Positions 7,275 through 58,860 of a stretch of 64,000 nt of DNA are shown piece after piece; within the stretch, counting starts at the first letter, position 1, and every line of letters begins with the position of its first letter. Source of the stretch: Octopus sinensis. Its lineage: Eukaryota. The position numbers were made by a program, and so were the translations under genes. The stretch covers positions 10,974,001 through 11,038,000 of the forward strand of contig NC_043023.1 in the NCBI RefSeq assembly GCF_006345805.1, in the 5' to 3' direction. Under the pieces are notes generated by a model, which worked only from the letters and a program-made list of their open reading frames with translations, searched no databases and had not been told where the DNA came from.

Positions 7275-7454
7275 TTTGACAGTAGTCTGAATGCCAAAGG
7301 GTTATACTACAAGGTGTCTGGGCTAAATTTGACAATATTTGATGCCTCTTTTTTTTTTTTTTTTTTATGTGTTGGAGAGCATAAATGTTAAAGGTGAGTT
7401 GAGAAAAAGATAGCTGACATAGAGGACCGGAAGCGATCTGAATATTCTTTTCTA

Positions 7455-8256
<802 letters not shown>

Positions 8257-9606
8257 TCATCCTGTATGAGTCCGATTGTGTTTAGTTAAACTTCTTCTTT
8301 GAGAGAATGATTTACCACAAATATCACAGTGATATGGTTTCTCAACCGCATGAATATGCTTGTGTTGAGTTAAGTAACCAGCATGCGACAGTGGTTTACC
8401 ACAGACATCACACAGATGTTTCTCTCCGCGATGGGTGTTTGTGTGAATAGTTAGGCTACCTTTATGAGAGAATGATTTATCACAGATGTCACAATGAAAT
8501 GGTTTCTCACCTGTGTGAATGCGTATGTGGGAAGTTAAATGATCCTTTCGAAGGAATGATTTGCCACAAATATCACAGCGATATGATTTTTCTTCTGAAT
8601 GGATACGTTTGTGTTTAGTTAAGTTGCCATTCAGAGTGAATGACTTACCACAGATAGCACAGTGATATGGTTTCTCGCCTGTATGAATGGTCTTGTGTCT
8701 ATCCAAGACTGTACCATCAGAGAATGATTTACCGCAGGTATCACAGTGATATGGTTTCTCTCCTGTATGAATGCGTTTGTGTCGAGTCAAGATTGTAGTG
8801 TCACAGAATGATTTACCACAAATATCACAGTGATATGGTTTCTCTCCAGTATGAATATATTTGTGTTTATTTAAATTGCCATTATGGCAGAAAGCCTTCC
8901 CGCAGATGTCACAGTGAAACGGCTTCTCTTCAGCATGAATGTATTTGTGTCTATTTAAGTCACTTCTTTGAGTGAATGATTTACCACAGGTATCGCAGTG
9001 ATGTTGTCTCTCTCCTGTATGAATATGCATGTGTTTGGTGAAGCGGCTTTCATCAGAGAAAGATTTATCGCAGATATCACAGTGATATGGTTTTTCTACA
9101 GAGTGAATACGTTTATGTTTAGTTAAGGTGCTTTTCTCTGAGAATGATTTACCACAGAAATCACAGACATATGGCTTTTCCCCTGTATGAATGCGTATGT
9201 GGCTAGTTAAGTGATCGCTCTGAGAAAAAGACTGACCACAGACATCACAGTGATATGGTTTTTCTCCTGTATGAGTACGTTTGTGCCTAGATAAGGCACC
9301 ATTTCGAGAGAACGATTTATCACAGACATCACAATGATATGGTTTCTCTCCTGTGTGAATAAACTTATGTTTAGTTACACTGCTACTCTGAGAGAACGAT
9401 TTACCACAGATATTACAGTGATATCGTTTCTCCCCTGTATGGATATTTTTGTGTTTGGTTAGGCTGCTCCTTTTAGAAAATGATTTACCACAGATATCAC
9501 AATGGTATGATGGTTTTCCTTCCTCAGAATTTATATCATCAGGTAACTCAATCTTTTTAGTCTCCGTTTCACATTCAACCTTGATCTCATTTAACTCACA
9601 TTCCAT
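8257..9606 (-). CDS. C2H2 zinc-finger protein, 449 aa, 15 tandem fingers, single coding exon
   Basis: 15 CxxC-x12-HxxxH units with TGEKPY-type linkers. First ATG (MECELNE) at 9606; the longer ORF in the track starts at a TTG inside a SINE. Candidate splice acceptor TTATTTCAG at 10370-10378 (minus strand). Confidence 0.92.
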
Positions 9607-9642
9607 AATTTTTCTTTCCTTACTACAATATACAGACGATTT

Positions 9643-10027
9643 AGTGGAGGCGCGATGGCCCAATGGTCAGGGCAGCGGACTCGCGGTCATAGGATCGCGG
9701 TTTTGATTCCCAGACCGGGCGTTGTGAGTGTTTATTGAGCGAAAACACCTAAAGCTCCACGAGGCTCTGGCAGGGGATGGTGGTGATCCCTGCTGTACTC
9801 TTTCACCACAACCTTCTCTCACTCTTACTTTCTGTTTCTGTTGTACCTGTATTTGAAAGGGCCGACCTTGTCACTCTCTGTGTCACGCTGAATATCCCCG
9901 AGAACTACGTTAAGGGTACACGTGTCCGTGGAGTGCTCAGCCACTTACACGTTAATTTCACGAGCAGGCTGCTCCGTTGATTCGGTTCAACCGGAACCCT
10001 CATCGTCGTAACCGACGGAGTGCTTCC
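9643..10027 (+). mobile_element. tRNA-derived SINE family C with 13-bp TSD
   Basis: tRNA-like head GTGGAGGCGCGATGGCCCAATGGTCAGGGC; TSD ATACAGACGATTT at 9630-9642 and 10028-10040. Confidence 0.88.
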
Positions 10028-16180: not shown

Positions 16181-16280
16181 NNNNNNNNNNNNNNNNNNNN
16201 NNNNNNNNNNNNNNNNNNNNNNNNNNNNNNNNNNNNNNNNNNNNNNNNNNNNNNNNNNNNNNNNNNNNNNNNNNNNNNNN
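16181..16280. other. Assembly gap (100 N)
   Basis: Run of 100 N. Confidence 1.
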
Positions 16281-17613: not shown

Positions 17614-18409
17614 AAATGAGAAAATGGAGAAACAAACCTAAATCAATCATCAACCATCAGATAATATCCAATCAATACTTTATTAAACCATTACACACAG
17701 CAATGACATTATACATAATATATTATAAATACTACTAGACATAGAAATAGAAATAGAAAATACAATTACATTGTAGCTGACAGCTGTGGGTACTACTTGA
17801 GAACAGTGGTCTCTGTGCGCGTAGTCGCGCATCCGCACTAGCTACTCATGACTAATCGATCCTTTGTGTTTTATTTACCTTCCTAGTCGTTGTAGGATCG
17901 ATTGTTCTCAACTAGTACCATATGTGTGTATGTATCTTCATAGAGGCTATCCACATGCTAGAAATGGCAGCCAAATCTCACAAAAATACTTCAATTTCAC
18001 GTGAATTTCTCAGACTTCCGCCCATCCCACCACCAAAAATAAAACCTCAAAAACCATCACAAGACCGGTTTTTTGTTCTTTTGTGCGACAATTCACATGA
18101 TGTCATCATAACCTGAGAATTTGCTTTCGGTACAAGAACACTACAAACCACTGAATGCCGAGCCGTAAGAATGTCAAAGATGCAAGGCTTTTTACTGGCA
18201 TAATTTCGTTTATATCTATATCCCACAACACGTAGATACTTAAAAACAGAACCCGCACACTGTCACGGAGGTCACGAAGATATCCAAAGTGAATTGTCCA
18301 GTTGAAACGAAGGAAAGGCCCCCTTTGCAGAGAGGTTAGTAGGTCCATTATGTTATCACAGTTTTGTGAGATTTGGCTGTTATTTCTAGCAAGTGGATCG
18401 CCTGCTTGA

Positions 18410-20411: not shown

Positions 20412-20964
20412 CAGCTAGCTGTATGTGATTGGTCGGAGATTTGGACAGTACTCACGTGTATGTGCGCACGCACGCAGCTGTATATGCATGCACTAGCACT
20501 ATGACCTGGCAACACCGGGTTATAATGCTTCTAAATGATAAAAGAAATATGCAGTCAATTTAGCTTTGTGCTTAACTTCCGCAAAAATTTCTTTTAAAAT
20601 ATTTTCCTGAGCAAAATAATATGCACAGTGACAGATCATTGTATTGTTTATTTGTGGATATAGTTTTAATTTAGAGTATATGGCTTGAACCAATTAAGAA
20701 TAGCTTTGTTAATTAGCTTACACTTTCATTATGACGACCAATAAATTGCTTTCACCTTTTTACAACACTAAACTGCGTATTAACCTGTCTGCGTATTAAC
20801 CTGTTTAACTGGATTAACCTGTATAATTGGATTTGCAATTTCCCAGCTATTTTGTCTAGACTTTTAATTAATTAGATATCCGCCATTGGTTCGTTGTCGT
20901 AAACTTGGTGTAACTGAAATAATTTTTGTTGTTTTTCAATTTTAGAAAATTACTTTTACAGATC

Positions 20965-21007
20965 ATGGACATTCTAAAGTTCTTTTGTTGTTTGTCTGCA
21001 TTATTTT
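20965..21007 (+). CDS. Coding exon 1 (signal peptide MDILKFFCCLSALF) of predicted GPI-anchored Ig-like protein
   Basis: Acceptor TTACTTTTACAG at 20950-20961, ATG at 20965, phase-1 donor T|GTAAGT at 21008. Confidence 0.75.
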
Positions 21008-21051
21008 GTAAGTTTTTATTCGTCATTCTTATTCTTAATAATTCATCCTCA

Positions 21052-22600
21052 TTAACCCTTTCATTACCAACCCGGCTGAAACCGGCTCTGGCTCTATAGT
21101 ACAAATGTCTTGTTTTCATAAGTTTTGAATTAAAATTTTCCACCAAACCTTAGTCACAATTTATGTTCCTAACATTAGCTTAATGATAATTAAGTTATTT
21201 TACTAAATTCTTTGTTATATTTAAAATTAATTGAAAGAAACACAGAGCATCTCAACAGAAATATGATAACAAAAGGGTTAAAAATATATAATAGAGAAAG
21301 AATTCTTAACCCTTTCGATACCAACCCGGCTGAAACAGGCTCTGGCTCTGAGTACAAATGTCTTGTTTTCATAAGTTTTGAATTAAAATCTTCCACCAAA
21401 TCTTAATCACAATTTATGTTCCTAACACTAGCTTAATGATAACTAAGTTATTTTACTAAATTCTTTGTTATATTTAAAACTAATTGAAAGAAACACAGAG
21501 CATCTCGACAGAATATGGTAACAAAGGGCTTAAAAATATATAATAGAGAAACAATTCTTAGTCACCATGATATTTTTAACCCTTTTCATACCAACCTGGC
21601 TGAAACTGGCTCTGGCTCTGTAGTACAAATATCTTGTTTTCATGAGTTTTGAATTAAAATCTTCCACTAAACCTTAGTCACAATTTACATTCCTAACACT
21701 AGCTGAATGATAACTAAGTTATTTTACTAAATTCTTTGTTATATTTAAAACTAATTGAAAGAAACACAGAGCATCTCGACAGAATATGGTAACAAAGGGC
21801 TTAAAAATATATAATAGAGAAACAATTCTTAGTCACCATGATATTTTTAACCCTTTTCATACCAACCTGGCTGAAACTGGCTCTGGCTCTGTAGTACAAA
21901 TATCTTGTTTTCATGAGTTTTGAATTAAAATCTTCCACTAAACCTTAGTCACAATTTACGTTCCTAACACTAGCTGAATGATAACTAAGTTATTTTACTA
22001 AATTCTTTGTTATATTTAAAATTAATTGAAAGAAACACACAGCATCTCAATAGAAATATGGTAACAAAAGGGTTCAAATATATAATAGAGAAACAATTCT
22101 TAACCCTTTCGTTACCAACCCGGCTGAAACCGGCTCTGGCTCTGTAGTACAAGTGACTTGTTTTCATCAAGTTTTGAATTAAAATCTTCCACTAAACCTT
22201 AGTCACAATTTACGTTCCTAACACTAGCTTAATGATAACTAAGTTATTTTACTAAATTCTTTGTTATATTTAAAACTAATTGAAAGAAACACAGAGCATC
22301 TCGACAGAATATGGTAACAAAGGGCTTAAAAATATATAATAGAGAAACAATTCTTAGTCACCATGATATTTTTAACCCTTTTCATACCAACCTGGCTGAA
22401 ACCACCTCTGGCTCTGTAGTACAAATATCTTGTTTTCATGAGTTTTGAATTAAAATCTTCCACTAAACCTTAGTCACAATTTATGTTCCTAACACTAGCT
22501 GAATGATAACTAAGTTATTTTACTAAATTCTTTGTTATATTTAAAATGATTGAAAGGAACATAGAGCATATCAAAATAAATACAGTAATGAAAGGGTTAA
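21052..22600 (+). mobile_element. Tandem array of 6 piggyBac-like MITEs (intronic)
   Basis: Same TTAA/CCC...GGG/TTAA unit and spacer as 5870-6602. Confidence 0.82.
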
Positions 22601-22767
22601 GGCATAACTATACAAGTAGACAGAATACTGGAATTGGCTGCCTACATAAGTTTGATTTTCTCTGTTTTGACAGGGATTTTTTGAATTATTTTTTCATGTT
22701 GAAATGCTTAAAATATCTGGCAGAGTATAAACATTTGGGGTTCATGATATGGGTTTGTAATAAGGTG

Positions 22768-22995
22768 GCGAGCTGGCAGAAACGTTAGCACGCCGGGCGA
22801 AATGCGTAGCTGTATTTCATCAGTCGTTACGTTCTGAGTTCAAATTCTGCCAAGGTCGTCTTTGCTTTTCATCCTTTCGGGGTCGATAAATTAAGTACCA
22901 GTTACGCACTGGGGGTCGATGTAATCGACTTAATCCGTGTGTCTGTCCTTGTTTGTCCCCTCTATGTTTAGCCCCTTGTGGGTAATAAAGAAATA
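22768..22995 (+). mobile_element. SINE family B
   Basis: Matches 3824-4052. Confidence 0.8.
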
Positions 22996-23377
22996 AATAT
23001 GGGTTGTATTATTCACCCTTTTGATATGTGGCTTGCGGGACCTCCGTTTGGGGGATATTTCTGAGTCACCATTTCACTCTTTTCTGCACAATTTCACAAG
23101 GCATTGGTCGGCCCGAAGCTATAGTAGAATACATTTGCCCAAGATGCCACGCAGTGGGACTGAACCCGGAACCATGTGGTTGGTAAACAAGCTACTTACC
23201 ACACAGCCACTCCTATGCCTATTTATTCATATTTTTTAAAAGTTAATCATTCATTACCTTGTCGTTTTAAAATTTTCATAATATGATTGTTAATCTTTAG
23301 ACTATCGTAGTGTAGAGTGAGAGGGTGGATGTACCCAGTTTGACTATTAAACAGTTAGAATAATATTTCAGCCACAT

Positions 23378-23925
23378 GAACCAGCCAGGATCCCTGGTCT
23401 GGTGGTACGTAAAAAGCACTATCCGACTCGTGGCCGATGCCAGCGCCGCCTCCACTGGCTTCCGTGCCGGTGGCACGTAAAATACACCAATCTGACCGTA
23501 CGACAGGCACCCATGCCAACCCCCTTTGCTTGCGAAGACATGTTGGGGCAAGCGAAAGCGAAATCGAAATCGAATTGAACCAGCCAGGATCCCTGGTCTG
23601 GTGGTACGTAAAAAGCACTATCCGACTCGTGGCCGATGCAAGCGCCGCCTCGACTGGCTTCCGTGCCGGTGGCACATAAAATACACCAATCCGACCGTGG
23701 CCGTTGCCAGCCTCGCCTGGCACCTGTGCAGGTGGCACGTAAAAAGCACCCACACAATCACGGAGTGGTTGGTGTTAGGAAGGGCATCCAGCTGTAGAAA
23801 CATTGCCAGATAAGACTGGAGCCTAGTGCAGCCTTCTGGCTTCCCTGATCCCCGGTCGAACCGTCCAACCCATGCTAGCATGGAGAACGGACGTCAAACG
23901 ATGATGATGATGATGATGATGATAT
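23378..23925 (+). mobile_element. RTE LINE 3' end with internal duplication
   Basis: UTR repeat units, the conserved terminal segment and a (GAT)n tail; about 23378-23500 is repeated at about 23578-23700. Confidence 0.8.
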
Positions 23926-24039
23926 GGCTAGTTTAACACTTTAGCAATCAAATCACTTTCTAATGTAATGTTAATTTATTCACATTGTTTTGAATTATAT
24001 CATCTTAAAATCAAAAATTTTTGTTTTCTTCTTTTACAG

Positions 24040-24078
24040 ATTTGACGAGTGCAAAAAATTATCGTATCACCCAAAGTG
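24040..24078 (+). CDS. Coding exon 2 ((Y)LTSAKNYRITQS) of predicted GPI-anchored Ig-like protein
   Basis: Acceptor TTTTCTTCTTTTACAG, 39-bp phase 1-1 exon, donor G|GTAAAT. Confidence 0.7.
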
Positions 24079-24126
24079 GTAAATGGATAAACAAACCTTT
24101 TTCCCCTTTTAAATTAGACATTACCT

Positions 24127-24517
24127 GGATCTTTTCGGTTTGACCGGCAGTTTTTTAAAATAATTTCCACGTAACTAAACACTTTTAAACTTCGTATACT
24201 GGTAGAATGTGTTTATAAAACATCATTTTCTCTTGGCTTTATTGAGAAAATTCTATGATTTGTAAGATATTTGTTGTTTTTTTTCTTCAATTTCTGCAAT
24301 TTCAACCAATCACTGACGTCTATTGAGTTAAAAAACATTCTGTGCCGTATGAATAATATGTCCCTCGTTTATGAAACAGATTGGGTTTATTTACATTTCT
24401 GAATACCTAACCCTAACCCAGACTGAAATGCAATAGATCGATACTAGGGTCATAATTATGGGTGACAATTTTATATGACACCGCTAGAAAAAACTGCCGT
24501 TCAAACCGAAAAGATCC
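24127..24517 (+). mobile_element. Merlin-like MITE monomer, 391 bp, 8-bp TSD
   Basis: TIRs GGATCTTTTCGGTTTGA.CGGCAGTTTTT at both ends; TSD CATTACCT at 24119-24126 and 24518-24525. The superfamily call rests only on GG termini plus the 8-bp TSD. Confidence 0.75.
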
Positions 24518-25173
24518 CATTACCTTTTCAGTTCTGTCTTCTATTTCTTTCTCTTAATTCAAAGCTTTTAGTCACTGTTTTGCTTTTGGTTTCTATAAAG
24601 TTTTTATTCTGACCATCGAGAAGGGCTAAAGAGCCAGAAATACACATTGGGGAAACACTAGAGCAGTGGGTTTCAACCAGGGTCAAGATGGCTTGTGGGG
24701 GTACTTATAAAATGGCCACCTTCAATCTTGCCATGGATCCAACAAGCCACAGCATTGTGGCAAGCTCTATTCCAGGCATTGGCAAGGTTTCGATTTCTTG
24801 ATGACCTTCCTAACACTGACCCCTTTACAAAGTGTGGTGGGTGCATTTTTTTTTATTATTGCACCACCACTGAATTGGTTTCCATTTCTCTGGGATTATG
24901 ATTGTCTTTCTAAAGAGGATTAGGGTTATCATGTTTATCCTCCTCATTCAAGGTCTGCGTTCCATGCTGGCATCATTGACCCCTTTTCGGTCCCTATCAT
25001 TTTACAGTGCACTGGAGCCTTTTCTGCACATAACTGGCCACTAGTGAAGTCACCAAATAACGGGAAAAGGCAAAGGAAGAGGAAGGAAACAAACCTTCAC
25101 TGAAGAGCATAGTAGAGAGGGAGATGGCTTTATGTCAGGTGTTGAGAGGTATACCAGGTATGATAGGAAGACA

Positions 25174-25752
25174 GGTGAGCTGGCAGAATCGTTAGCACCC
25201 CGGGCGAAAAGGCTTAGCGGTATTTCGTCTGCCGCTACATTCTGAGTTCAAATTCTGCTGAGGTCGACTTTGCCTTTCATCCTTTCGGGGTCAATAAATT
25301 AAGTACCAGTTACCCACAGGGGTCGATGTAATTGACTTAATACCTATGTCTGCCCTTGATGGTCTCCTCTATGTTTAGCCCCTTGTGGGTAGTAAAGAAA
25401 TAGGTATTTCGTCTGCCACTACGTTCTGAGTCAAATTCTGCCGAGGTCGACTTTGCCTTTCATCCTTTCGGGGTCGATTAAATAAGTACCAGTTACGCAC
25501 GGGGGTCGATGTAATCAACTTAATACCTATGTCTGCCCTTGTTTGTCCCCTCTATGTTTAGCCCCTTGTGGGTAGTAAAGAAATAGGTATTTCGTCTGCC
25601 ACTACGTTCTGAGTTCAAATTCTGCCGAGGTCGACTTTGCCTTTCATCCTTTCGGGGTCGATTAAATAAGCACCAGTTACGCACTGGGGTCAATATAATC
25701 CACTTAATCTGTTTGTCTGTCCCTGTTTTGCCCTTTATGGGTAGTAAAGAAA
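25174..25752 (+). mobile_element. SINE family B with one head and three tandem bodies
   Basis: Units restart at GGTATTTCGTCTG (25219, 25403, 25586). Confidence 0.85.
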
Positions 25753-25992
25753 AGGGTATGATAGAAGGGCAGGAACACGTGTCTCACTGCAGGGACCCTG
25801 CATTATATAAGGGTTGGTGGGAGTGACTGGATAGGGACATGGTTTAATCAGGCGTACACCCATGTCTGATGAAATCATGTCCCAGTAAACATAAATCTCA
25901 TTAAATTAAAACTCGTAATAAGATGTCTAATTTCTTTTGATGGTCTCTATTGCACATTTTCCCTTTTAATTTCCAGGGGCAAAAACTATTAA

Positions 25993-26584
25993 CCCTTTAG
26001 CGTTCAGATTACTCTGTCAAATGTCCTGCTTATTTATTTACATTGTTTTGGATTAATCATGGATTATCTCATAGCTTTGAGATTTCAATGATGTGATGCT
26101 TTATTTCCAGAATGACATTGTAGGTTAGATGGGAGAGGTCAGATATGGCTAGTTTGAACATCAGACAAGTGGAGTATTTGGGTCTGATATCACTAGGCAC
26201 CATTCGAGTGTGGTCATTACCAGCGTGGCCTTACTGGCATTTCTGCCCGTGCTAGTAGGGTGCCAAGAGCACCATCTGAGCGCGATCGTTGCCAGAGCAG
26301 CCAACTGGCTTCCGTGCCAGTGGCACGTAAAAGGCCACCATTCGAGCGTGATCGTTACCAATGTCACCTTACTGGCACCTGTGCCAGTGGCACGTGTAAA
26401 AAGATTCGAGCGAGGTCTTTGCCAGATAATCACACATTATCTCATAGCTTTGAGATTTCAATGATGTGATGCTTTATTTCCAGAATGACATTGTAGGTTA
26501 GATGGGAGAGGTCAGATATGGCTAGTTTGAACATCAGACAAGTGGAGTATTTGGGTCTGATATCACTAGTTTAATGCTAAAGGG
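25993..26584 (+). mobile_element. piggyBac-like MITE (second family) with RTE-UTR insert and 143-bp duplication
   Basis: TTAA|CCCTTTAGC...GCTAAAGGG|TTAA; an uninterrupted 219-bp relative lies at 33076-33294. Confidence 0.8.
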
Positions 26585-26909
26585 TTAAATTTGGATGTGA
26601 GGTGAAGGCCTGGCTGTGATTAGGAACTTTTCTTTCCAAGCGCATGATTTAAGGTCCAGTCCCCTTGTATGGCACCTTGTTTAATTGTCCTCCACTATAG
26701 CCCCAGGCCAACAAAAGCCTTGTGAGTGGATTAGGTAGACAGGAGCTAAAAGGAGCCCACTGTGTGTATATATGGGATGTTATAGCCTTGTTTGGAAACA
26801 GATGAAGGTTTGTGACAGGAAGAGCATCCTACTGTTGAGAATAAAAACTCTTATCCACAAAGCATGGATGAGTGGGCATCATAATGATGCTGATGTTCTG
26901 CCTTGAAGA

Positions 26910-27675
26910 GTTTCTGGTTGAATGAATCGACCCCAGGCCTTATTCTATTGGTCTCTTTTGCTGAACCACCAAGTTACTGGGACGTAGAGACACCAACACT
27001 TGTTGGCAAGTGGTAGTGGGAAACAAACACATATAAATAAACAACAGGCTTCTTTCAGTTTCCGTCTACCAAATCCACACAGGCTGTAGTAGAAGACACT
27101 TGCCCAAGGTGCTATGCAGTGGGACTGAACCCGGAACCATGGGGTTGGTAAACAAACTACTTACCACACAGCCACTCCTGCGCCTATTACTCTTTTACTC
27201 TTTTACATGTTTCAGTCATTTGACTGCAGCCATGCTGGAGCACCGCCTTTAGTCGAGCAACTCGACCCCAGGACTTATTCTTTGTAAGCCCAGTACTTAT
27301 TCTATCGGTCTCTTTTGCCGAACCGCTAAGTGACGGGGACGTAAACACACCAGCATTGGTTGTCAAGCAATGCTAGGGGTACAAACACAGACACACAAAC
27401 ACATACACATACACACATACATACACATATATATACATATATACGACAGGCTTCTTTCAGTTTCCGTCTACAAAATCCACTCACAAGGCATTGGTCGGCT
27501 CGGGGCTATAGCAGAAGACACTTGCCCAAGATGCCACGCAGTGGGACTGAACCCGGAACCTTGTGGTTGGTTAGCAAGCTACTTACCACACGGCCATATA
27601 TATAAACAATGGGCTTCTTTCAGTTTCCATCTATCAAATCCACTCAAGAGCCTTTGAAACACACAAGTGTGTATG

Positions 27676-27713
<38 letters not shown>

Positions 27714-27845
27714 GGGCTTCTTTCAATTTCCATCTAGAAAATCCGCTCACAAGGCTTATGCAGTAGTAGACGACACTTTCCCAAGGTGCTCTGCAGTGGG
27801 ACTGAACCCAGAACCATATGGTTGGGAAGCAAACTTCTTAAGTGA
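26910..27845 (-). mobile_element. Cluster of 3 SINE family A copies
   Basis: Successive minus-strand matches to 12415-12820. Confidence 0.8.
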
Positions 27846-27859
27846 TTTCTTTATTTCAG

Positions 27860-28108
27860 GACCTGCTGTGCTCCATAGAAATGTCACCCTTTCGATAAGG
27901 ATACCGAACATGAAACGACCGGCGGTTTGGAAGTGCCACAATTATAAATATGAATGTGACAGGACATGCGCTGATGGCCCTGACTATAAAGTGACACAGA
28001 AAGAAGATACCTCCACGCTTTGGATCAGAAACATAACTGAGAAATGTTCGACTTGGAAATTTGAAGATGACAACCTTAATGGTGGAAGAATTCATTTGGA
28101 GATAAAGA
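27860..28108 (+). CDS. Coding exon 3: Ig-like domain (83 codons) of predicted GPI-anchored protein
   Basis: Acceptor TTTCTTTATTTCAG, donor A|GTAAGG, phase 1-1. Reads GPAVLHRNVTLSIRI...AVWKC...STLWIRNITEKCSTWKF...RIHLEIK with 4 Cys and 2 N-glycosylation sequons. Confidence 0.8.
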
Positions 28109-28281
28109 GTAAGGAAATGATTTATAATAATTTCTTTATTAACCACAGAGGGCTAACACAAAGCAAAACATTCGGGAGGGTCCAGTGTGGGTTTTAGCAT
28201 GTAAAAAGTCATGCAAAGAAGAAAAGAAATTCAAAGTAAGATCTCTGATAGTGGGGGGACTTTCAAGGGCTACACGTAAAA

Positions 28282-29150
28282 AAAGCCCACAAAATCCATG
28301 GTCTCCCTGACCACCAGGGTGGATGCCCTCTCCCGGTCTTTCCTCTGCAATATACAGGTACACTCTGAGAGAAGGCCCATTCACTCAGGTAATGCTCACC
28401 TCTCTCACCCACCTTTCAACAAACTGCTTGGAAGCCAGCACTTACCTCTCCACCCTGATTTTCCTCTTCAAGTGAAACCTGAAAAAGTTTATTAGGGTTT
28501 TGACAAAATGGCAATTGCTGGTCTTCAGCCCTTTCAGACATGTCCATCACATGATCCCTTTTGCAATGGCAACTAGAGTCACACAGGGAGAAAGCCCACA
28601 AAATCCATGGTCTCCCTGACCACCAGGGTGGATACCCTCTCCAATATACAGGTACACTCTGAAAGAAGGCCCATTCACTCAGGTAATGCTCACCTTTCAA
28701 CAAACTGCTTGGAAGCCAGCACTTACCTCTCCACCCTGATTTTCCTCTTCAAGTGAAACCTGATAAAGTTTATTAGGGTTTTGACAAAATGGCAATTGCT
28801 GGTCTTCAGCCCTTTCAGACATGTCCATCACACGATCCCTTTTGCAATGGCAACTAGAGTCACACAGGGAGAAGGCCCACAAAATCCATGGTCCCCCTGA
28901 CCACCAGGGTGGATGCCCTCTCCCAGTCTACAGGTGCACACTCAGGCAATGCTCACCTCTCTCACCCATCTATCAAGAAACTGCAATGGAAGGCAGCACT
29001 TCCACCCTTATTTTTCTCTTTATCCTTATTTTCTCTTCTTCAAACCTGAAAAAGATTATTTGAGCTTCAACAAAAGGACAACTGCTGGTCATCAGCCCTT
29101 TCAGACATGTCCACCACATGATCCCTTTTGCAGTGGCAACCAGAGAGATA
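28282..29150. repeat. About 280-310 bp tandem triplication (intronic)
   Basis: Units start AAAGCCCACAAAATCCATGGTC at about 28282, 28593 and 28874. Confidence 0.85.
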
Positions 29151-29212
29151 AGGTAACTGCTTGCCCTTCCTGGCTGAAGGAAAGCAGTGGGACTATCATC
29201 AGCTGATGGTTG

Positions 29213-29246
<34 letters not shown>

Positions 29247-29321
29247 TGATGATGATGATGATGGTGATGATGGTGGTGGTGCTGGTGGTGGTGGTGCTGG
29301 TGGTGATGATGAAAAAAAAAT

Positions 29322-29879
29322 AAATGCCCTGATGCAGTACCAGGCAGTGGCTCTCATGACTTCTGATCTTAACTGATTGGAAGTGTTATCATGTACATTG
29401 TTTTGTCTTGGTATAAAAGATGGGCTACAGCAAATATTCTGCTCAATACCACAGATTTGTTTGTCAGTTGTTTGGCCTTAACCAGTTGAGCATGTCCCTT
29501 AGTGGATGACGATATGTGTACCTCTGATCATGAGCAGAAGTAGTGGGGGAGCATCATAGCCATGTGTTGAGAGGGATTCTTTGGGGTTTGAATAATTCAC
29601 CTCTGGAAACATGGGTGGTTCTTTCAACATCCTTAAACAACCCTTATTCAGGGACCTTTTGAGCGGGATGGGCTACTCAACCTGAAGAAAATTCTAACTG
29701 GGCCCCACCTGCAAGGTCATGCGCTGTTTATCTTGATATGAGATCACCATGTCGCGCACATATGGTTGTGATGCATGTGCCTGGTGTACCCTTATCAGAC
29801 TGGTAGTCATGATGGGTATATTGGGCTTCGTATATTTTACCCCAGTGTCACTTTGATGGCATGAACTGCTCTCTCACTC

Positions 29880-29880
<1 letters not shown>
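29322..29880 (+). mobile_element. Unclassified interspersed repeat ending in an (AAT)n tail (probable LINE 3' UTR)
   Basis: Moderately GC-rich non-coding block between trinucleotide tracts, ending CTCTCACTCA(ATA)n. Confidence 0.45.
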
Positions 29881-29947
<67 letters not shown>

Positions 29948-30356
29948 TAATAATAATAATAATAATAATTATAATAATGATGATGATAATAATTACTTTT
30001 ATTTGCCACCAGGGCGAAGGATGTGTCAATACCAAGACAGACATAAAGTGTCTGTCTGTGTGTGTGTGTGTGGTGGGGTGCAGTTTACATATACCCTAAA
30101 TCTTTGAGTATAATCCGCATTTTTTCCCAAAGATTTAAAGATCAAAATCCCTAGTGCATACTATATACGTGGTTAAAAATGAAAAATATTTTCTAAGCAA
30201 TGTCCGAGTCTCTATTTGCTGTCTGGCAATGTTTATTCAGACACATTTTGTGATGTCGGGCACGAAAATACCTTAAGCTAAGCCTGAAAGCAATGAAGTC
30301 ATAAAAGAATCATCCATAACTTGCAGTAAGCAACATTTATTAAAATAAAAGTATTC

Positions 30357-31115
30357 AGAACAAGGTCTCGGAGGAGATAGTGTTAGTTGAAGGCTACCAA
30401 ACCTGCCACACACAGACAACTTCAGCTTTATAAATAGTAACAAATAGGGATTTTCATAGAAAAAAAGCACCTTTTTGATGTAAATAATTTTTGGTGTTAA
30501 CATGGTCCGATTTGAATTTTTTCTTCTACGGAAGGAAGAACAAGCCTTCTTCTATCAAACTCTCAACTTTGGTCAACTTGCGCCGCAGGCTCTCGGAGGA
30601 GATAGTGTTAGTTGAAGGCTACCAAACCTGCCACACACAGACAACTTCAGCTTTATAAATAGTAACAAATAGGGATTTTCATAGAAAAAAAGCACCTTTT
30701 TGATGTAAATAATTTTTGGTGTTAACATGGTCCGATTTGAATTTTTTCTTCTACGGAAGGAAGAACAAGCCTTCTTCTATCAAACTCTCAACTTTGGTCA
30801 ACTTGCGCCGCAGGCTCTCGGAGGAGATAGTGTTAGTTGAAGGCTACCAAACCTGCCACACACAGACAACTTCAGCTTTATAAATAGCAAAAAATAGGGA
30901 TTTTCATAGAAAAAAAGCACCTTTTTTATGTAAATAATTTTTGGTGTTAACATGGTCCGATTTGAATTTTTTCTTCTACGGAAGGAAGAGCAAGCCTTCT
31001 TCTATCATACTCTCAATTTTGGTCAACTTGCGCCACAGGGTCTCGGAGGAGATAGTGTTAGTTGAAGGCTACCAAACCTGCCACACACAGACTACTTCAG
31101 CTTTATATATATAGA
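30357..31115 (-). mobile_element. Helitron-like 5' portion with a 225-bp tandem repeat (3.3 copies)
   Basis: TCTCGGAGGA recurs at 30366, 30591, 30816 and 31041; minus-strand A|TCTATATATATAAAG start at 31115. Confidence 0.7.
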
Positions 31116-31358
31116 TTTAATTAAATAATTTTGTCATCATTAAACTGATTTTTGGAACATAAATTAACATATTTTGATGGAAGGTTTTAATTTAGCTTAC
31201 TTTAAATTAGGGAATTTTCACGATTGGAAACAAGGGCAGTCTTGAGCAAGTTGATATGAAAAGTGTATATAAATGATATGTTTTATTGTTTATCTTTGTG
31301 TGTGATATGACACCAATATCTGTGGCTTATGATGATATCACATTGAAATCTTTTGCAG

Positions 31359-31435
31359 ATGGTGCACAAGGAACCAGCAGCCTCAGAACCAAGTCCATCC
31401 TTGTCATTGGGATGATAATTGCTGTCATCATTTAA
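31359..31435 (+). CDS. Coding exon 4: GPI-anchor-signal-like C-terminus ((N)GAQGTSSLRTKSILVIGMIIAVII*)
   Basis: Acceptor AATCTTTTGCAG, phase 1; small residues, then a polar spacer, then a terminal hydrophobic stretch; TAA at 31433-31435. Confidence 0.75.
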
Positions 31436-32477
31436 ACATTTTAAGAAAGACCAGTAATAATCTCAGGTGCTGGAAAGGCACTTTTTGATATTTAATCTTT
31501 TATTTTTAATCAGTTTCAGTCATTTTGCTGAGTCCATGCTAGAGCAATGTCTTGAAGGGTTTTTAGTTGAATAAATTGAAACCTGAGCATTTTTTTAAGC
31601 CTAGTTATTCCATTGGTCTCTTACTCTAAATCACTTTGTGATGGGGACATAAACACACCAACACCAATTATTAAACGATGATGGGGGACAAATACAGACG
31701 CACAACCAACTTCTTTCAGCTTCCATCTATCAAATCCACTCAAAAGGGTTTGGTCGGCCCAAGGCTATCATAGAAGACACTTGCCCAAGGTGCCACACAG
31801 TGGGACTGAACCCGGAACCATAAGGTTGGAAAGCAAGCTTGATTTGTTCACCTAAAGGCGGTATTCCAGCATGGCTCAAGGTGCCACACAGTGGGACTGA
31901 ACCCGGAACCATAAGGTTGGTAAGCAAGCTTGATTTGTTTGCCTAAAGGCGGTATTCCAGCATGGCTGCAGTCAAATGACTGAAACAAGATATTTTTAAT
32001 TTCATTTATGCCTCCCCCTCTCTTTCAATGAAGGCTCTATCTTTCTTACTTTATCCATAGTCTCTCATCTCTCTCTCGATTTCTACACAAAAATGAAATG
32101 TATAAGTTACCCCATAGGCGCCAAAACTTCCAAAGGGCAACTAAAATTTTATTTTCCTCTAATTCACATGATACCATTTATTCTGCAATTTGGGATTAAT
32201 ATATCCAGAGATGTAAAATATTTGTAGCAGCACCATGCAGGCATAGCATGGATTCGATCTTCAACAGAACTTTTCTCATGGTAAAACAATAGTCTTTCTG
32301 TGACATCAGTTACATTTGCCAGATGCCTTTGCTAAGCAGAATAATATCTTTGCCACCGGGCCCTTCTAACCTCTTCTATATAACCAAGAGTGAAACTGAC
32401 AAGACAATAGACCCCTCCAAACTACTCACTGTTTGGATAACGGTATGTCTCTCTTTCTTGTTATCTTGAGATAGTTA

Positions 32478-36045: not shown

Positions 36046-39000
36046 ATGAATTCTGCCAAACGCGAGTTTTCTTTTCAGGTTCATGATGCTACTAGGTCCA
36101 ATGCTTCCCACTCCCTCAGGATTGGCACCCTCAACGTTGGCACACTGAAAGGCAGATCTGGCGAGATCGTTGAATTGCTTGAACGAAGGTGTGTGGATAT
36201 ATGCTGTGTTCAAGAGGTGAGGTGGAGAGGAGGTTCTGCTAGGTTCCTCACAGGTAAAGGACAGAGGTACAAGATTTTCTGGGCTGGGAATACTGAAGGG
36301 GTCGGGGGAGTAGGTATGCTTATTGCCGAAAAATGGGTAGGTAAGGTAATCGAGGTAGTCAGAGTATGTGACAGAATACTGAAGATTAGTTTAGTGCTCC
36401 ATCATATTTCAGCAACTATTATATCGGCCTATGCCCCTCAGCCAGGGCTACCCGATGGACAGAAAGACTGTTTCTATGACACCCTACTGCAGACCACCTC
36501 ACTGACGAACGACAGGGACCTTCTCTTTGTGGATGGTGACTTCAATGGGCATGTTGGACGATATGCTGAGGGCTTCTATGGCATTCATGGAGGCTATGGT
36601 TATGGTTCTCGCAATGAGGAGGGAACCAGGCTGCTGGAGTTCTGTGATGTGAATAGTCTTATGGTTTGCAACACTAACTTCAGGAAACCGACAAGCCACT
36701 TGGTCACCTACTTTCGGGCCAGCATACTAGCCAAATCGACTACATCCTTACCAGAAAAAGGGAAAGATGGCTGCTTATAAATGCCAAAACCTTCCCAAGC
36801 GAAGAGTGTACCCCACAACATAGACTGGTAGTTAGTGACTTTAGAATCAGGACTAAGAGGACGACTAGAAGACGACCAACATGGAGAAGAAGGGTCTGGA
36901 AGCTTAAAGACCCTGCAAATGGACAGAGATTTAGAGACATGTTACTTGAAGTCTTCCACGAAATAGAAGGGGGTATAGCTACACATGGGGTAGAAGATAA
37001 CTGGGCGCTTCTAAGGGACAACCTGCTGAAAGCCACAGACCAGATCTGTGGCTGGTGCAAAGTCCCCACAAGACCCAAAATAACGTGGTGGTGGAACAAT
37101 ACTGTTGACAGGGCTATTAGACAAAAGAAACAGGCTTGGAAGGACTGGAAGAACGGTGGTAGCAGGGAAGTGTATCAGACTGCAAGAAGGGAGGCTAGGA
37201 GGCAGGTGTATTTAGCCAGAGGGGAAGCAGATAAGAAAAAATTTGCCAATGTCCTGCGCCGTGAAGATGAAAGACTTGAGGTATTTCGTGTTGCAAGACA
37301 GTGTGTGAGAGAGAATCGTGACGTGGTAGGAGAGAAATGTGTTCGCAAGGATGACAGCTCACTTGCGCTAAATGAGGATGCAAAGAGAGAGGTTTGGAGA
37401 CGCCACTATGAAAGGTTGCTGAATGAGGAAAATGAATGGGATAAAGAGAGTCTGCCGAATGTTGACCCAACAGAGGGACCAGCAATCCGAGTTGACAGTT
37501 CCTTAGTAGATAAGGCAATTAGAAGCATGAAAACAGGGAAAGCCCCAGGCCCATCAGGAATTACTGCAGAGATGCTCAAAATATCTGGTAGTGCTGGCTA
37601 TAGCCTAGTCACCCGTATAGTTAACTAGGTGATACACGAAGGAGTCATTCCCAATGACTGGTGTAGCAGCATAATAGTTAACTGCTACAAAGGTAAAGGT
37701 GACGCCCTAGATACAAATAACTACAGGGGTATCAAGCTGCTAGATCAGGTAATGAAGGTAACGGAGAGGGTCATAGCCCAACTAATTAGAGAGAGAGTTA
37801 GTTTAGATGAGATGCAGTTTGGGTTCGTGCCAGGGAAAAGTACTACTGATGCTATTTTCCTGGTAAGACAGCTGCAGGAGAAATACCTAACCAAAGATAA
37901 GCCCTTGTACCTGGCTTTTGTTGACTTGGAGAAAGCCTTTGACAGGGTCCCCCGATCCCTTATCTGGTGGTCAATGAGGAAACTAGGGATAGATGAATGG
38001 TTAGTTAGAGCTGTGCAAGCCATGTACAGAGACACTGCTAGTAAGGTGAGGGTTGGCAACAAGTACAGTGAAGAATTCCGGGTAGAGGTTGGGGTCCACC
38101 AAGGTTCAGTCCTCAGTCCCCTCCTATTTATCATAGTCCTCCAGGCAATAACAGAGGAATTCAAGACAGGATGCCCCTGGGAGCTCCTCTATGCTGATGA
38201 CCTTGCTCTAATTGCTGAGTCACTATCAGAACTGGAGGAGAAGTTTCAGGTGTGGAAACAAGGATTAGAATCGAAGGGCCTTAGAATCAACCTAGCCAAA
38301 ACCAAAGTCCTAATAAGTAGGAAGGTGGACCAATCACAAACGACTTCAGGTAGATGGTCCTGCTCGATCTGTAAAAAAGGTGTAGGTAGAAACTCTATAA
38401 GGTGCACCAAGTGTAAGCTATGGACACATAAGAGGTGCAGCAATGTCAAAGGAAGGCTAACTAGGAAAATAGTTTTTGTCTGTGGCAGATGCTCAGGAGC
38501 AATAAACACCGGAAATGTGCAGAGACCAACTTCTACCACGTTCCAGGGAGACAAACTAGAAGTAGTTGATAGCTTCCGCTACCTAGGAGACCAAGTCAGT
38601 AGCGGGGTGGGTGTGCTGAAAGTGTAACTGCTAGAGTAAGAATAGCCTGAGCAAAGTTTAGAGAGCTCTTACCCCTGTTGGTGACAAAAGGCCTCTCGCT
38701 CAGAGTAAAAGGCAGACTGTATGATGCATGTGTACGTACAGCCATGCTACATGGTAGTGAAACATGGGCCGTGACTGCTGAGGATATGCGTAAGCTCGCA
38801 AGAAATGAAGCCAGTATGCTCCGATGTATGTGTAATGTCAGTATTCATAATCGTCAGAGTGTAAGTACCTTGAGAGAAAAGTTGAACCTAAGAAGCGTCA
38901 GTTGTGGTGTGCAAGAGAGACGGCTGCGCTGGTATGGTCATGTGACGAGAATGGCTGAAGATAGTTGTGTGCAAAAGCGCTACACCCTAGCAGTTGAGGG

Positions 39001-39683
39001 AACCTGTGGAAGAGGTAGACCCAGGAAAACCTGGGACGAGGTGGTGAAGCACGACCTTCGAACTTTAGGTCTCACCAAGGAAATGACTAGTGACCAAGAC
39101 CTATGGAAGTATGCTGTGCGTGAGAAGACCCGACAAGACGAGTCAGGCCATAACCCGTGACCCCTACCTGGGACGTAGTCAGTCCACCTGTGCATACCTT
39201 CCTTCTTGTGACACTTGTGAAGACCTGTTGAGGCAAGTGAAAATCAAAACAAATCAAAATAGATGAACATCAATGGAATTTGTATCTTTGTGGTATCAGT
39301 GCCGGGGGCACACAAGAAAACCATCCGAACGTGGCCATAGCCAGTACCGCATCGACTGGCCTCCGTGCTGTGGGCACGTAACAAACACCATCCGATCGTG
39401 GCCGTTCGCCAGCCTCATCTGGCACCTGTGTCGGTGGCACATAAAAACACCATCCGAGCATGGCCGTTCGCCAGCCTCGTCTGGCACCTGTGTCGGTGGC
39501 ACATAAAATCACCCACTACACTCTCGGAGTGGTTGGCGTTAGGAAGGGCATCCAGCTGTAGAAACACTGCCAGATCTGACTGGCCTGGTGCAGCCTTCGA
39601 GCTCCCCAGACCCCAGTTGAACCGTCCAACCCATGCTAGCATGGAAAGCGGACGTTAAATGATGATGATGATGATGATGATGA
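36046..39683 (+). mobile_element. Near full-length RTE-clade LINE (APE, RT, PHD-like finger, 3' UTR repeat), inactivated
   Basis: APE motifs (GTLNVGTL, QEVRW, YAPQ, GDFNGHVG, IDYIL); RT motifs (NYRGIKL, QFGF, DLEKAFDRV, GVHQGSVLSP, YADD); C-terminal GRGRPRKTW. Lesions: frameshift near 36712, TAG at 37626, frameshift near 38603, TGA at 38648. Ends in a (GAT)n tail. Confidence 0.95.
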
Positions 39684-58858: not shown

Positions 58859-58860
58859 AG

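What the first reader, a model, noticed from the sequence alone, without database searches (positions are those of the whole stretch)
20965..31435. Hidden four-exon gene for a small GPI-anchored single-Ig-like-domain surface protein
Seen: four exons (20965-21007, 24040-24078, 27860-28108, 31359-31435) have consensus splice sites, all phase 1, and join without stops into 135 aa: MDILKFFCCLSALFYLTSA / KNYRITQSGPAVLHRNVTLSIRIPNMKRPAVWKCHNYKYECDRTCADGPDYKVTQKEDTSTLWIRNITEKCSTWKFEDDNLNGGRIHLEIK / NGAQGTSSLRTKSILVIGMIIAVII. Established: phase 1-1 domain exons are typical of Ig domains, and small residues plus a spacer plus a terminal hydrophobic tail is the form of a GPI signal. Inference: the domain lacks the canonical B-strand Cys and the DxGxYxC motif but has 4 Cys and 2 sequons (NVT, NIT), so it is a non-canonical Thy-1-like protein. 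From memory and needing verification, this profile resembles the GPI-anchored squid neural glycoprotein Sgp-1.
Basis: partly seen in the sequence, partly recalled or inferred. Interest (0 to 1): 0.85.

Follow-up and report, generated by a model that had tools for sequence, protein, structure and literature searches.

The report
Annotated octopus Ig-like surface protein gene
The four exons form a real octopus gene for a small, probably lipid-anchored, immunoglobulin-like surface protein; it is already in RefSeq as an uncharacterised protein and belongs to a fast-evolving gene family found only in octopods, so it is correct but fairly ordinary.

Summary
The four exons have GT-AG borders, all introns are phase 1, and they join into 135 codons plus a stop. 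The gene is not hidden. The window is Octopus sinensis CM016885.1:10974001-11038000, and the protein is 100% identical over its full length to RefSeq XP_036370213.1, 'uncharacterized protein LOC115225458'. O. bimaculoides and O. vulgaris homologues use the same four exons, and an octopus RNA contig for a paralogue is collinear with them.

The domain folds confidently as an Ig-like (I-set-type) beta-sandwich (AF2 pLDDT 95; Foldseek hits titin, obscurin, VL and vNAR). It keeps the C-strand Trp but lacks the B-F disulfide. Instead it has an invariant C60/C64 pair and a co-varying C53/C90 pair. The 19-residue signal peptide and the tail (NGA, a 9-residue spacer, 13 hydrophobic residues ending the protein) fit a GPI signal. 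No predictor or experiment was available to test this.

The gene is one of at least 18 O. sinensis loci of an octopod-only family. Members carry 1-4 domain copies and end in either a GPI-like tail or a transmembrane segment. The sinensis/vulgaris orthologues differ by 13 nonsynonymous and 1 synonymous change. No sequence link to Thy-1 or to any squid protein was found, and Sgp-1 could not be tested.

The parts
17922..17927 (+). Tentative 3' end of an upstream 5' exon (ATGTGT followed by the donor gtatgt at 17928). Its start is unknown.
   Evidence: The O. vulgaris model P0078 starts MCI+MDILK. Its first coding bases ATGTGT|GTATGT are conserved at this window position. This is inferred by homology only.
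20962..21007 (+). Start-codon exon. The acceptor cag| ends at 20961 and the ATG is at 20965. It encodes residues 1-14 of the signal peptide (phase-1 donor gtaagt).
   Evidence: The alignment of octopus transcript L002 to the window begins at 20961.
24040..24078 (+). 39-nt mini-exon. It encodes the end of the signal peptide (to 24053, cleavage predicted after T-S-A19) and the A strand (KNYRITQSG). Similar mini-exon-like linkers precede each domain copy in multi-domain paralogues.
   Evidence: An exon of the same size is present in O. bimaculoides.
27860..28108 (+). 249-nt phase 1-1 exon encoding strands B to G of the Ig-like domain (residues 28-110). It carries W51, C53, C60, C64, C90, W93, F95 and the sequons NVT35 and NIT85.
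31359..31435 (+). Last coding exon. It encodes the GPI-signal-like tail N111-G-A, the spacer QGTSSLRTK, the hydrophobic run SILVIGMIIAVII, and the TAA stop (31433-31435).
   Evidence: This exon is identical in O. vulgaris.
31436..31575 (+). Probable 3' UTR up to the first AATAAA (31570-31575).
   Evidence: Transcript L002 of a paralogue aligns up to 31489. The polyadenylation site is inferred, not shown.

Best explanation
This is the protein-coding gene LOC115225458 of Octopus sinensis. It encodes a 135-aa precursor. Residues 1-19 are a cleavable signal peptide. Residues 20-110 form one Ig-like (I-set-type) beta-sandwich with strands A, B, C, C', D, E, F and G. The canonical B-F disulfide is replaced by core residues (I40 and, by inference, F95). 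Two other disulfides are inferred: C53-C90 between the neighbouring C and F strands, and C60-C64 closing a small loop after strand C'. The last exon supplies a C-terminal GPI-attachment signal whose omega site is most likely N111, or possibly G115. The mature product would be a glycosylated domain of about 92 residues, tethered to the outer leaflet of the plasma membrane by a lipid anchor. It has no cytoplasmic part, so it can only act by binding something outside the cell or next to it in the same membrane. It belongs to an octopod-restricted, tandemly clustered family in which the same domain occurs 1-4 times and ends in either this GPI-type tail or a 23-residue transmembrane helix with a short basic tail. 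Its ectodomain changes amino acids faster than its introns change bases, as is common for recognition molecules. Shown: the gene model, its conservation, family membership, the Ig-like fold at prediction level, and the cysteine co-variation. Inferred: signal-peptide cleavage, the disulfide pairing, the GPI anchoring, and the recognition or adhesion role.
For: Gene model: the exons, splice sites and phases are as stated. The product is 100% identical to XP_036370213.1, and the gene span is the same in GCA_006345805.1. O. bimaculoides has the same exon sizes, with dN/dS 0.34-0.45. The O. vulgaris locus is collinear at 96-99.6% identity with all exons open. An RNA-derived octopus contig (SRR3401912, an octopus meta-transcriptome) encodes the paralogue P0023 with the same layout, and it aligns to exons 1, 3 and 4 in order.

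Fold: AF2 on 35 domain copies gives pLDDT 95 and pTM 0.86 with 8 strands. Foldseek matches titin M1, I27 and I10, obscurin Ig, VL, vNAR and sDscam Ig1 at probability 1.00 and TM 0.5-0.7. An exhaustive profile search reaches obscurin (E 1e-14, 13 stretches), hemicentin-like, FcR-like and CD22-like proteins. hhalign places TLSI on TLKC and W51 on the canonical Trp. Paralogues give weak I-set hits.

Cysteines: C60 and C64 are present in 35 of 35 domain copies. C53 and C90 are both present in 20 copies, both absent in 12, and discordant in 3.

Tail: the 13 hydrophobic residues end exactly at the C-terminus with no charged residue after them. They are preceded by N-G-A and a 9-residue polar spacer. 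Sister genes instead carry 23-28-residue transmembrane segments plus basic tails.

Family and cluster.

Fast evolution: there are 13 nonsynonymous and 1 synonymous differences from O. vulgaris. pN is 0.041, pS is 0.012 and the intron-2 mismatch rate is 0.0056 (Fisher p = 6e-7).
Against: This protein has no Pfam family at E <= 10 and no PDB sequence match. Full-length AF2 with only 7 sequences was poor (pLDDT 50.5). The Ig assignment therefore rests on a model built from family-internal sequences (Neff about 2.9) plus weak profile links. No SignalP, GPI predictor, model coordinates or RNA-seq mapping were available. As a result, cleavage, omega site, disulfide geometry and expression of this particular copy are unverified. 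XP_ accessions are computational models. The hydrophobic tail is short at 13 residues. pN/pS above 1 could also mean relaxed constraint.
Confidence: 0.72

Rival explanations
1. The protein and fold are the same, but the C-terminal hydrophobic stretch is not exchanged for GPI. The product would then be either a type I membrane protein with no cytoplasmic tail, or it would be released as a soluble secreted Ig-like protein.
For: No GPI predictor or experiment was available. The paralogue LOC115225109 has isoforms ending ...TKSILSLG with no hydrophobic tail (P0002 and P0004), so soluble forms exist in the family. Other members use true transmembrane anchors.
Against: Thirteen uncharged hydrophobic residues are too few for a stable membrane span. 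They end the protein with no stop-transfer charge. The N-G-A triad plus a 9-residue spacer fits the omega, omega+1, omega+2 and spacer rule (established knowledge of GPI signals). The tail exon is identical between O. sinensis and O. vulgaris while the ectodomain diverges.
Confidence: 0.17
2. The copy is a young duplicate drifting towards a pseudogene. It is annotated only because its frame is still open, and the excess of amino-acid changes reflects relaxed constraint or patchy gene conversion from neighbouring paralogues rather than function.
For: pN/pS is about 3.4 against O. vulgaris. Changes are clustered and often hit adjacent bases. About half of the differing residues in each species match the states of other family members. 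No transcript with exactly this product was found in the look-up.
Against: The frame, start, stop and all six splice sites are intact in O. sinensis and O. vulgaris. All core positions (W51, C53, C60, C64, C90, W93, F95) are kept. No change falls in the GPI-signal exon, and the signal peptide differs only by a one-codon indel. Against O. bimaculoides, dN/dS is 0.34-0.45.
Confidence: 0.08
3. It is the octopus counterpart (true homologue) of squid Sgp-1 and/or vertebrate Thy-1. That would make it an ancient small GPI-linked neural Ig glycoprotein.
For: Small size, a single Ig-like domain and a GPI-type tail are shared. [quoted passage not shown] What it says about Sgp-1 is known to me only from memory.
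Against: The exhaustive profile search of 1.84 billion representatives returned 43 hits. None was from a squid or was a Thy-1 among those whose source was checked. The strong hits whose source was checked were all octopods (Octopus, Argonauta), apart from two unnamed Logan RNA contigs. The fold and HMM leanings are I-set, not V-set. The canonical Thy-1 B-F disulfide is absent.
Confidence: 0.05

Closest known systems
I-set immunoglobulin domains (titin M1/I27/I10, obscurin Ig domains)
   Same: They are the best structural matches (Foldseek probability 1.00, TM 0.6-0.7). The only non-family sequence-profile links also go to them: obscurin with 12-13 matched stretches at E 1e-13 to 1e-14, and the titin D-E strand motif. 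They share the A-B-C-C'-D-E-F-G strand set and the conserved C-strand Trp, and they fold without a B-F disulfide.
   Different: Those are intracellular, many-domain muscle proteins. This is a single extracellular domain with a signal peptide, N-glycan sequons, its own C-F and C'-loop cysteine pairs, and a lipid-anchor signal. Identity is only 12-18%.
Thy-1 (CD90)
   Same: The architecture is analogous: a small precursor with a signal peptide, one Ig-superfamily domain, and a C-terminal GPI signal carried on its own last exon. The Thy-1 exon layout is recalled from memory.
   Different: Thy-1 is V-set with the canonical B-F disulfide. Here that disulfide is absent, the strand set lacks C'', and no Thy-1 appears in the exhaustive profile search. 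This works like Thy-1 but is not a member of its family.
Squid Sgp-1 (Williams, Tse and Gagnon 1988, Immunogenetics 27:265)
   Same: From memory only: a small, abundant, lipid-anchored cephalopod neural glycoprotein compared to Thy-1.
   Different: It could not be compared, because neither the sequence nor the paper is held. No squid protein was among the hits.
Haliotis rufescens LOC124119024 (XP_048257965.1), a five-repeat Ig-like membrane protein
   Same: It is the closest non-cephalopod hit (E 1e-14 summed over 5 repeats; hhalign E 6.5e-4 for one repeat). It shares the C-x-x-x-C motif after strand C' (TCNPSC versus ECDRTC) and the STLxI E strand.
   Different: It keeps the classical D-A-G-T-W F-strand motif, has extra terminal cysteines, carries five copies plus a transmembrane segment, and passes the Pfam I-set threshold.
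Ig-superfamily genes that exist in both GPI-linked and transmembrane forms (for example NCAM and Aplysia apCAM isoforms, CEACAM family)
   Same: The family mixes GPI-type and transmembrane-type endings on the same ectodomain module, and it is tandemly clustered and fast-evolving. The comparison rests on general knowledge.
   Different: There is no sequence relationship. Here the two endings belong mostly to different genes rather than to isoforms of one gene.

Membership tests
Immunoglobulin superfamily (Ig-like beta-sandwich, I-set type) | Two-sheet Greek-key beta-sandwich of 7-9 strands that matches solved Ig domains | tested here: met
   AF2 gives pLDDT 95, pTM 0.86 and 8 strands. Foldseek PDB top hits are nearly all Ig-type domains, at probability 1.00 and TM up to 0.70. 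This is prediction-level evidence only.
Immunoglobulin superfamily (Ig-like beta-sandwich, I-set type) | Match to a Pfam Ig-clan model (I-set, V-set, Ig_3 and others) above the curated cut-off | tested here: inconclusive
   This protein has 0 families at E <= 10. Paralogues reach I-set at E 1e-5 to 1e-4, and one (P0013) scores 25.5 bits against the 23.7-bit cut-off, but only as a sum of weak stretches. Five of 35 single domains hit I-set, at best E 0.024. In the reverse direction, the family profile finds obscurin, hemicentin-like and CD22-like proteins.
Immunoglobulin superfamily (Ig-like beta-sandwich, I-set type) | Invariant C-strand tryptophan packing in the core | tested here: met
   W51 is invariant in 35 of 35 domain copies. 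It aligns to the canonical Trp of a CD22-like Ig domain.
Immunoglobulin superfamily (Ig-like beta-sandwich, I-set type) | Canonical B-F intersheet disulfide and the D-x-G-x-Y-x-C motif | tested here: not met
   The B-strand Cys position is I40 (TLSI versus TLKC). The F strand reads C90-S-T-W-K-F95. The cysteines present are C53, C60, C64 and C90. This feature is typical of the superfamily but not obligatory, since many I-set domains lack it.
Immunoglobulin superfamily (Ig-like beta-sandwich, I-set type) | Domain exon bounded by phase-1 introns | tested here: met
   Exons of 43, 39, 249 and 77 nt make all introns phase 1. The same holds in O. bimaculoides.
GPI-anchored proteins | Cleavable N-terminal signal peptide | tested here: inconclusive
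   By inspection, M-D-I-L-K is followed by an 11-residue hydrophobic core and T-S-A before K20, which fits the -3/-1 rule. No SignalP was available.
GPI-anchored proteins | C-terminal signal made of small omega, omega+1 and omega+2 residues, a 5-10-residue polar spacer, and a 12-20-residue hydrophobic stretch that ends the protein | tested here: met
   The tail is N111-G-A, then QGTSSLRTK (9 residues), then SILVIGMIIAVII (13 residues, no residue after it). This is a rule-of-thumb check, not a trained predictor.
GPI-anchored proteins | Release by PI-PLC, or chemical proof of the anchor | not testable with these tools
   This needs an experiment.
Thy-1 (CD90) family | Detectable sequence homology to Thy-1 | tested here: not met
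   No Thy-1 was identified among the 43 hits (E <= 1e-3) of the exhaustive profile search. Sources were checked.
Thy-1 (CD90) family | V-set domain with a canonical B-F disulfide | tested here: not met
   There is no C'' strand. The best matches by fold and HMM are I-set. The B-F cysteines are absent.
Squid Sgp-1 | Sequence similarity to the published Sgp-1 sequence | not testable with these tools
   The paper (PMID 2894353) is not held and no paper in the library gives the sequence. Indirectly, no squid protein was among the profile hits.

The most novel reading that the evidence does not exclude
The family could be an octopod-specific, rapidly diversifying recognition system built from a private variant of the Ig fold (C-F disulfide plus C-x-x-x-C loop). 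It would have paired GPI-only and transmembrane members clustered on one chromosome. That would make it functionally comparable to vertebrate paired-receptor or Thy-1-type families, used in immune, gamete or neural/chemotactile recognition and evolving under positive selection.
Probability: 0.15. Interest if true: 0.6.

Novelty: new member of a known kind. Interest (0 to 1): 0.3.

Why it matters
As a gene it is already in RefSeq, so nothing was 'hidden'. What this work adds is a classification. A set of 'uncharacterized' octopod proteins with no Pfam assignment turns out to be a divergent Ig-like (I-set-type) family with its own cysteine pattern. The family has GPI-type and transmembrane members, at least 18 loci in O. 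sinensis (13 of them on one 21-Mb chromosome), and unusually fast amino-acid change between sister species. Lineage-specific surface-receptor expansions are a recurring theme in cephalopod biology, the protocadherin expansion being one example. This family is therefore a reasonable candidate for expression and binding studies. It does not open a long-standing question.

Tried and rejected
- Pfam on the protein itself found nothing, and PDB sequence searches with the protein and with the profile found nothing significant.
- Full-length AF2 with the 7-sequence alignment gave pLDDT 50.5 and was discarded in favour of the 35-copy domain alignment.
- The below-threshold Pfam hit 'Sgo0707_N2' on paralogue P0008 (25.4 bits against a 27-bit cut-off) was treated as chance.
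- I looked for further domain copies, for an alternative transmembrane-type last exon, and for the extra 16-residue exon seen in paralogues. None is in the window.
- Three literature searches for Sgp-1, and an attempt to open PMID 2894353, yielded only the title in reference lists.
- No held paper mentions any of the six LOC identifiers searched. A search for an octopus Ig/GPI family paper found nothing relevant.
- Exact-product look-ups for P0007 and P0079 found no record.
- I chose not to type a Thy-1 sequence from memory, because the exhaustive profile search already covers that question.
- I ran no further search on the unrelated 1437-aa ORF.

Full report

Yes. The four intervals read exactly as described. 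Each intron starts with gtaag or gtaaa and ends in a pyrimidine-rich tract followed by cag or gcag. Exon lengths of 43, 39, 249 and 77 nt put all three introns in phase 1.

The window has 38.4% G+C and is full of LINE-type ORFs, microsatellites and C2H2 zinc-finger genes. It is byte-identical to Octopus sinensis assembly GCA_006345805.1, chromosome CM016885.1, positions 10974001-11038000.

**2. The gene is not hidden.**

The 135-aa product is 100% identical over 100% of its length to RefSeq XP_036370213.1, 'uncharacterized protein LOC115225458 [Octopus sinensis]'.

Independent support comes from three sources:
- **O. bimaculoides.** LOC106883582 (P0006, 62% identical) has exons of exactly 43, 39, 249 and 77 nt with the same splice consensus. 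Its Nei-Gojobori dN/dS against the window gene is 0.45 over the whole CDS and 0.34 over the domain.
- **O. vulgaris.** The orthologous locus (L006) is collinear with the window at 96-99.6% identity through introns and flanks, and it keeps all four exons open.
- **RNA.** A 1,067-nt contig from run SRR3401912, described in PMC11662614 as an octopus meta-transcriptome, carries an uninterrupted ORF for the paralogue P0023 (138 aa). That ORF has the same signal peptide, domain and tail layout. Its DNA aligns to the window in order at exon 1 (from 20961), exon 3 and exon 4 plus 54 nt of 3' UTR. The splicing pattern is thus used in real octopus mRNA, although in a relative and not in this exact gene.

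**3. The gene probably extends upstream.**

A strong acceptor (ttacttttacag|) ends 3 nt before the ATG. The L002 transcript diverges from the window exactly there. The O. vulgaris model P0078 begins MCI-MDILK from a tiny upstream coding piece, ATGTGT|gtatgt, and that piece is conserved at window 17922-17927. A 5' exon about 3 kb upstream is therefore likely but not proven. The first AATAAA after the stop codon is at 31570.

**4. What the protein is.**

*Sequence searches.* The protein alone gives no Pfam hit and no PDB sequence hit. A profile of the first seven relatives found 31 proteins, all from Octopus species, many carrying two or three tandem copies of the same ~92-residue module.

*Structure prediction.* I cut out 35 non-redundant domain copies to make alignment A2. 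With A2, AlphaFold2 gives a confident model with mean pLDDT 95, pTM 0.86 and eight strands. The full-length run with seven sequences reached only pLDDT 50.5.

*Fold comparison.* Foldseek against the PDB returns almost only immunoglobulin-type domains among the top 50 listed. These include titin M1, I27 and I10, obscurin Ig domains, antibody VL, shark vNAR and sDscam Ig1, at probability 1.00 and TM-scores of 0.5-0.7.

*Sequence-level agreement.* An exhaustive HMMER search of 1.84 billion representatives with the A2 profile gave 43 hits. Beyond the octopod family these are:
- a five-repeat Ig-like protein of the abalone Haliotis rufescens;
- Latimeria obscurin, with 12-13 matched stretches at E 1e-13 to 1e-14;
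- hemicentin-like, Fc-receptor-like and CD22-like proteins;
- a few unrelated low-scoring hits.

Paralogues also give sub-threshold or borderline Pfam I-set hits. The PDB profile search picks out the titin D-E strand motif.

*Strand type.* The predicted strand order A, B, C, C', D, E, F, G has no C''. Together with the I-set leanings, this places the domain nearer the I-set than the V-set.

**5.

In an hhalign alignment to a canonical CD22-like Ig domain, 'VTLSI' lies on 'VTLKC' and W51 lies on the canonical Trp. The B-strand cysteine is therefore replaced by I40. The F strand reads C90-S-T-W93-K-F95 instead of D-x-G-x-Y-x-C.

Across the 35 domain copies, C60 and C64 (E-C-D-R-T-C) are invariant. 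C53 and C90 are both present in 20 copies, both absent in 12, and discordant in only 3. Some copies that lack them gain an F-C-D...x-C-S pair instead. From this I infer two disulfides:
- C60-C64, closing a small loop after strand C';
- C53-C90, between the end of strand C and the start of strand F, which are neighbours in the same sheet.

The abalone relative shares the C-x-x-x-C motif but keeps D-A-G-T-W.

The two sequons in this protein (NVT35, NIT85) are not conserved in the O. vulgaris orthologue. The family's most common sequon column (residue 77, in 23 of 35 copies) is not a sequon here.

**6. The two ends of the protein.**

The N-terminus (M-D-I-L-K, an 11-residue hydrophobic core, then T-S-A before K20) has the form of a cleavable signal peptide. 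This is by inspection, with no predictor.

The last exon encodes N111-G-A, a 9-residue polar spacer (QGTSSLRTK) and 13 uncharged hydrophobic residues that end the protein. That is the textbook layout of a GPI-attachment signal, and it is too short for a membrane span.

The family contrast is informative. P0001, P0003, P0006, P0007 and P0023 share this tail. P0008, P0009, P0015 and P0016 instead have 23-28-residue hydrophobic segments followed by basic cytoplasmic tails (P0012 and P0017 have shorter ones of 14-17 residues). LOC115225109 has isoforms with no hydrophobic end at all.

GPI anchoring is therefore the best reading (I put it at about 0.7), but it is untested.

**7. Family, distribution and tempo.**

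The strong hits whose source was checked come from O. sinensis, O. bimaculoides, O. vulgaris and Argonauta hians; two (P0047, P0049) are unnamed Logan RNA contigs. In O. sinensis at least 13 named loci sit on the same 21.3-Mb chromosome as this gene, and at least 5 more lie elsewhere. Only one copy lies in this window. No squid, cuttlefish or Nautilus protein appeared.

Between the sister species O. sinensis and O. vulgaris, the coding sequence differs by 13 nonsynonymous changes, 1 synonymous change and one codon indel. pN is 0.041 and pS is 0.012, while intron 2 differs at 21 of 3,781 aligned bases (0.56%). Fisher's exact test of nonsynonymous sites against intron sites gives p = 6e-7.

All substitutions fall in exons 2 and 3, which encode the ectodomain. 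None falls in the tail exon. Using O. bimaculoides P0003 as a rough outgroup, about half are derived in each species, and many derived states equal those of neighbouring paralogues. Diversifying selection and patchy gene conversion therefore cannot be separated with the present data.

**8. Mechanism proposed.**

The product is a secreted-pathway protein whose signal peptide is removed, whose single Ig-like domain is glycosylated and cross-linked by two non-canonical disulfides, and whose C-terminal peptide is exchanged for a GPI anchor. This leaves a ~92-residue domain on the outer face of the cell.

With no cytoplasmic part, it must work by binding. It could act as a ligand, an adhesion partner, a co-receptor or a decoy for the transmembrane family members. 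Clustering, copy-number variation, mixed anchors and fast ectodomain change are what one sees in recognition families. The partner and the tissue are unknown.

**9. Comparison with known families.**

It works like Thy-1 and other small GPI-linked Ig proteins, but it is not a Thy-1 family member:
- there is no sequence link;
- the strand set is I-set rather than V-set;
- there is no B-F disulfide.

The Sgp-1 idea stays a recollection. Only the title of Williams, Tse and Gagnon (1988) could be confirmed, from reference lists. The paper is not held.

**10. Verdict.**

The gene is an already annotated but uncharacterised member of the Ig superfamily, from an octopod-specific expansion. It is a new member of a known kind, of modest interest.

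Noticed in passing
window 54545-59940 (+): An uninterrupted 1437-aa ORF (54545-58858) is followed, after a single stop, by a 359-aa ORF (58861-59940) on the same strand. Neither has a Pfam-A hit at E <= 1e-3, and the larger has no PDB sequence match. This is an intronless, 5.4-kb, coding-looking stretch of unknown identity in an octopus genome.
   Followed up: partly
window 20965-31435 versus L006 (O. vulgaris OX597842.1:22344214-22362751): The orthologues differ by 13 nonsynonymous changes, 1 synonymous change and a one-codon indel, while introns differ by about 0.6-1.5%. The changes are clustered (residues 20-42, 62, 85-86, 102), often hit adjacent bases, and frequently match paralogue states. 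This suggests positive selection or gene conversion within the cluster.
   Followed up: partly
window 21160-22600 (intron 1) and 5976-6583: There is a tandem array of a unit about 250-270 bp long. The same unit occurs in the 3' UTR of the octopus transcript contig L002 (positions 962-1067), so it is probably a SINE-like or satellite repeat common in octopus genomes.
   Followed up: no
window 7448-9663 (-) and about 62559-63647 (+): Two C2H2 zinc-finger genes flank the region. The first has a 468-aa ORF with about 13 fingers. The second is similar to O. sinensis 'zinc finger protein 239-like'. Both fit the known octopus expansion of C2H2 zinc-finger genes.
   Followed up: partly
window 749-2805 (-) and 36046-39160 (+): These are LINE-type retrotransposon ORFs (endonuclease and reverse-transcriptase-like translations), recognised by eye from the ORF list only. 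A 100-N assembly gap lies at 16181-16280.
   Followed up: no
L005 4979-5194 (-), O. bimaculoides CM046629.1: A degenerate antisense copy of the family's domain exon (32% identical, with an in-frame stop) lies inside intron 1 of LOC106883582. It is a decayed duplicate, which shows turnover within the cluster.
   Followed up: no
window 24079-24119 (start of intron 2): The first ~40 nt of intron 2 read in frame as GKWINKPFSPFKLD. They match the C-terminus of the O. bimaculoides model P0041 (…QNGKWIYKPFPPFKL). That annotated protein therefore looks like a read-through of the equivalent donor, either intron retention or a truncated model.
   Followed up: no
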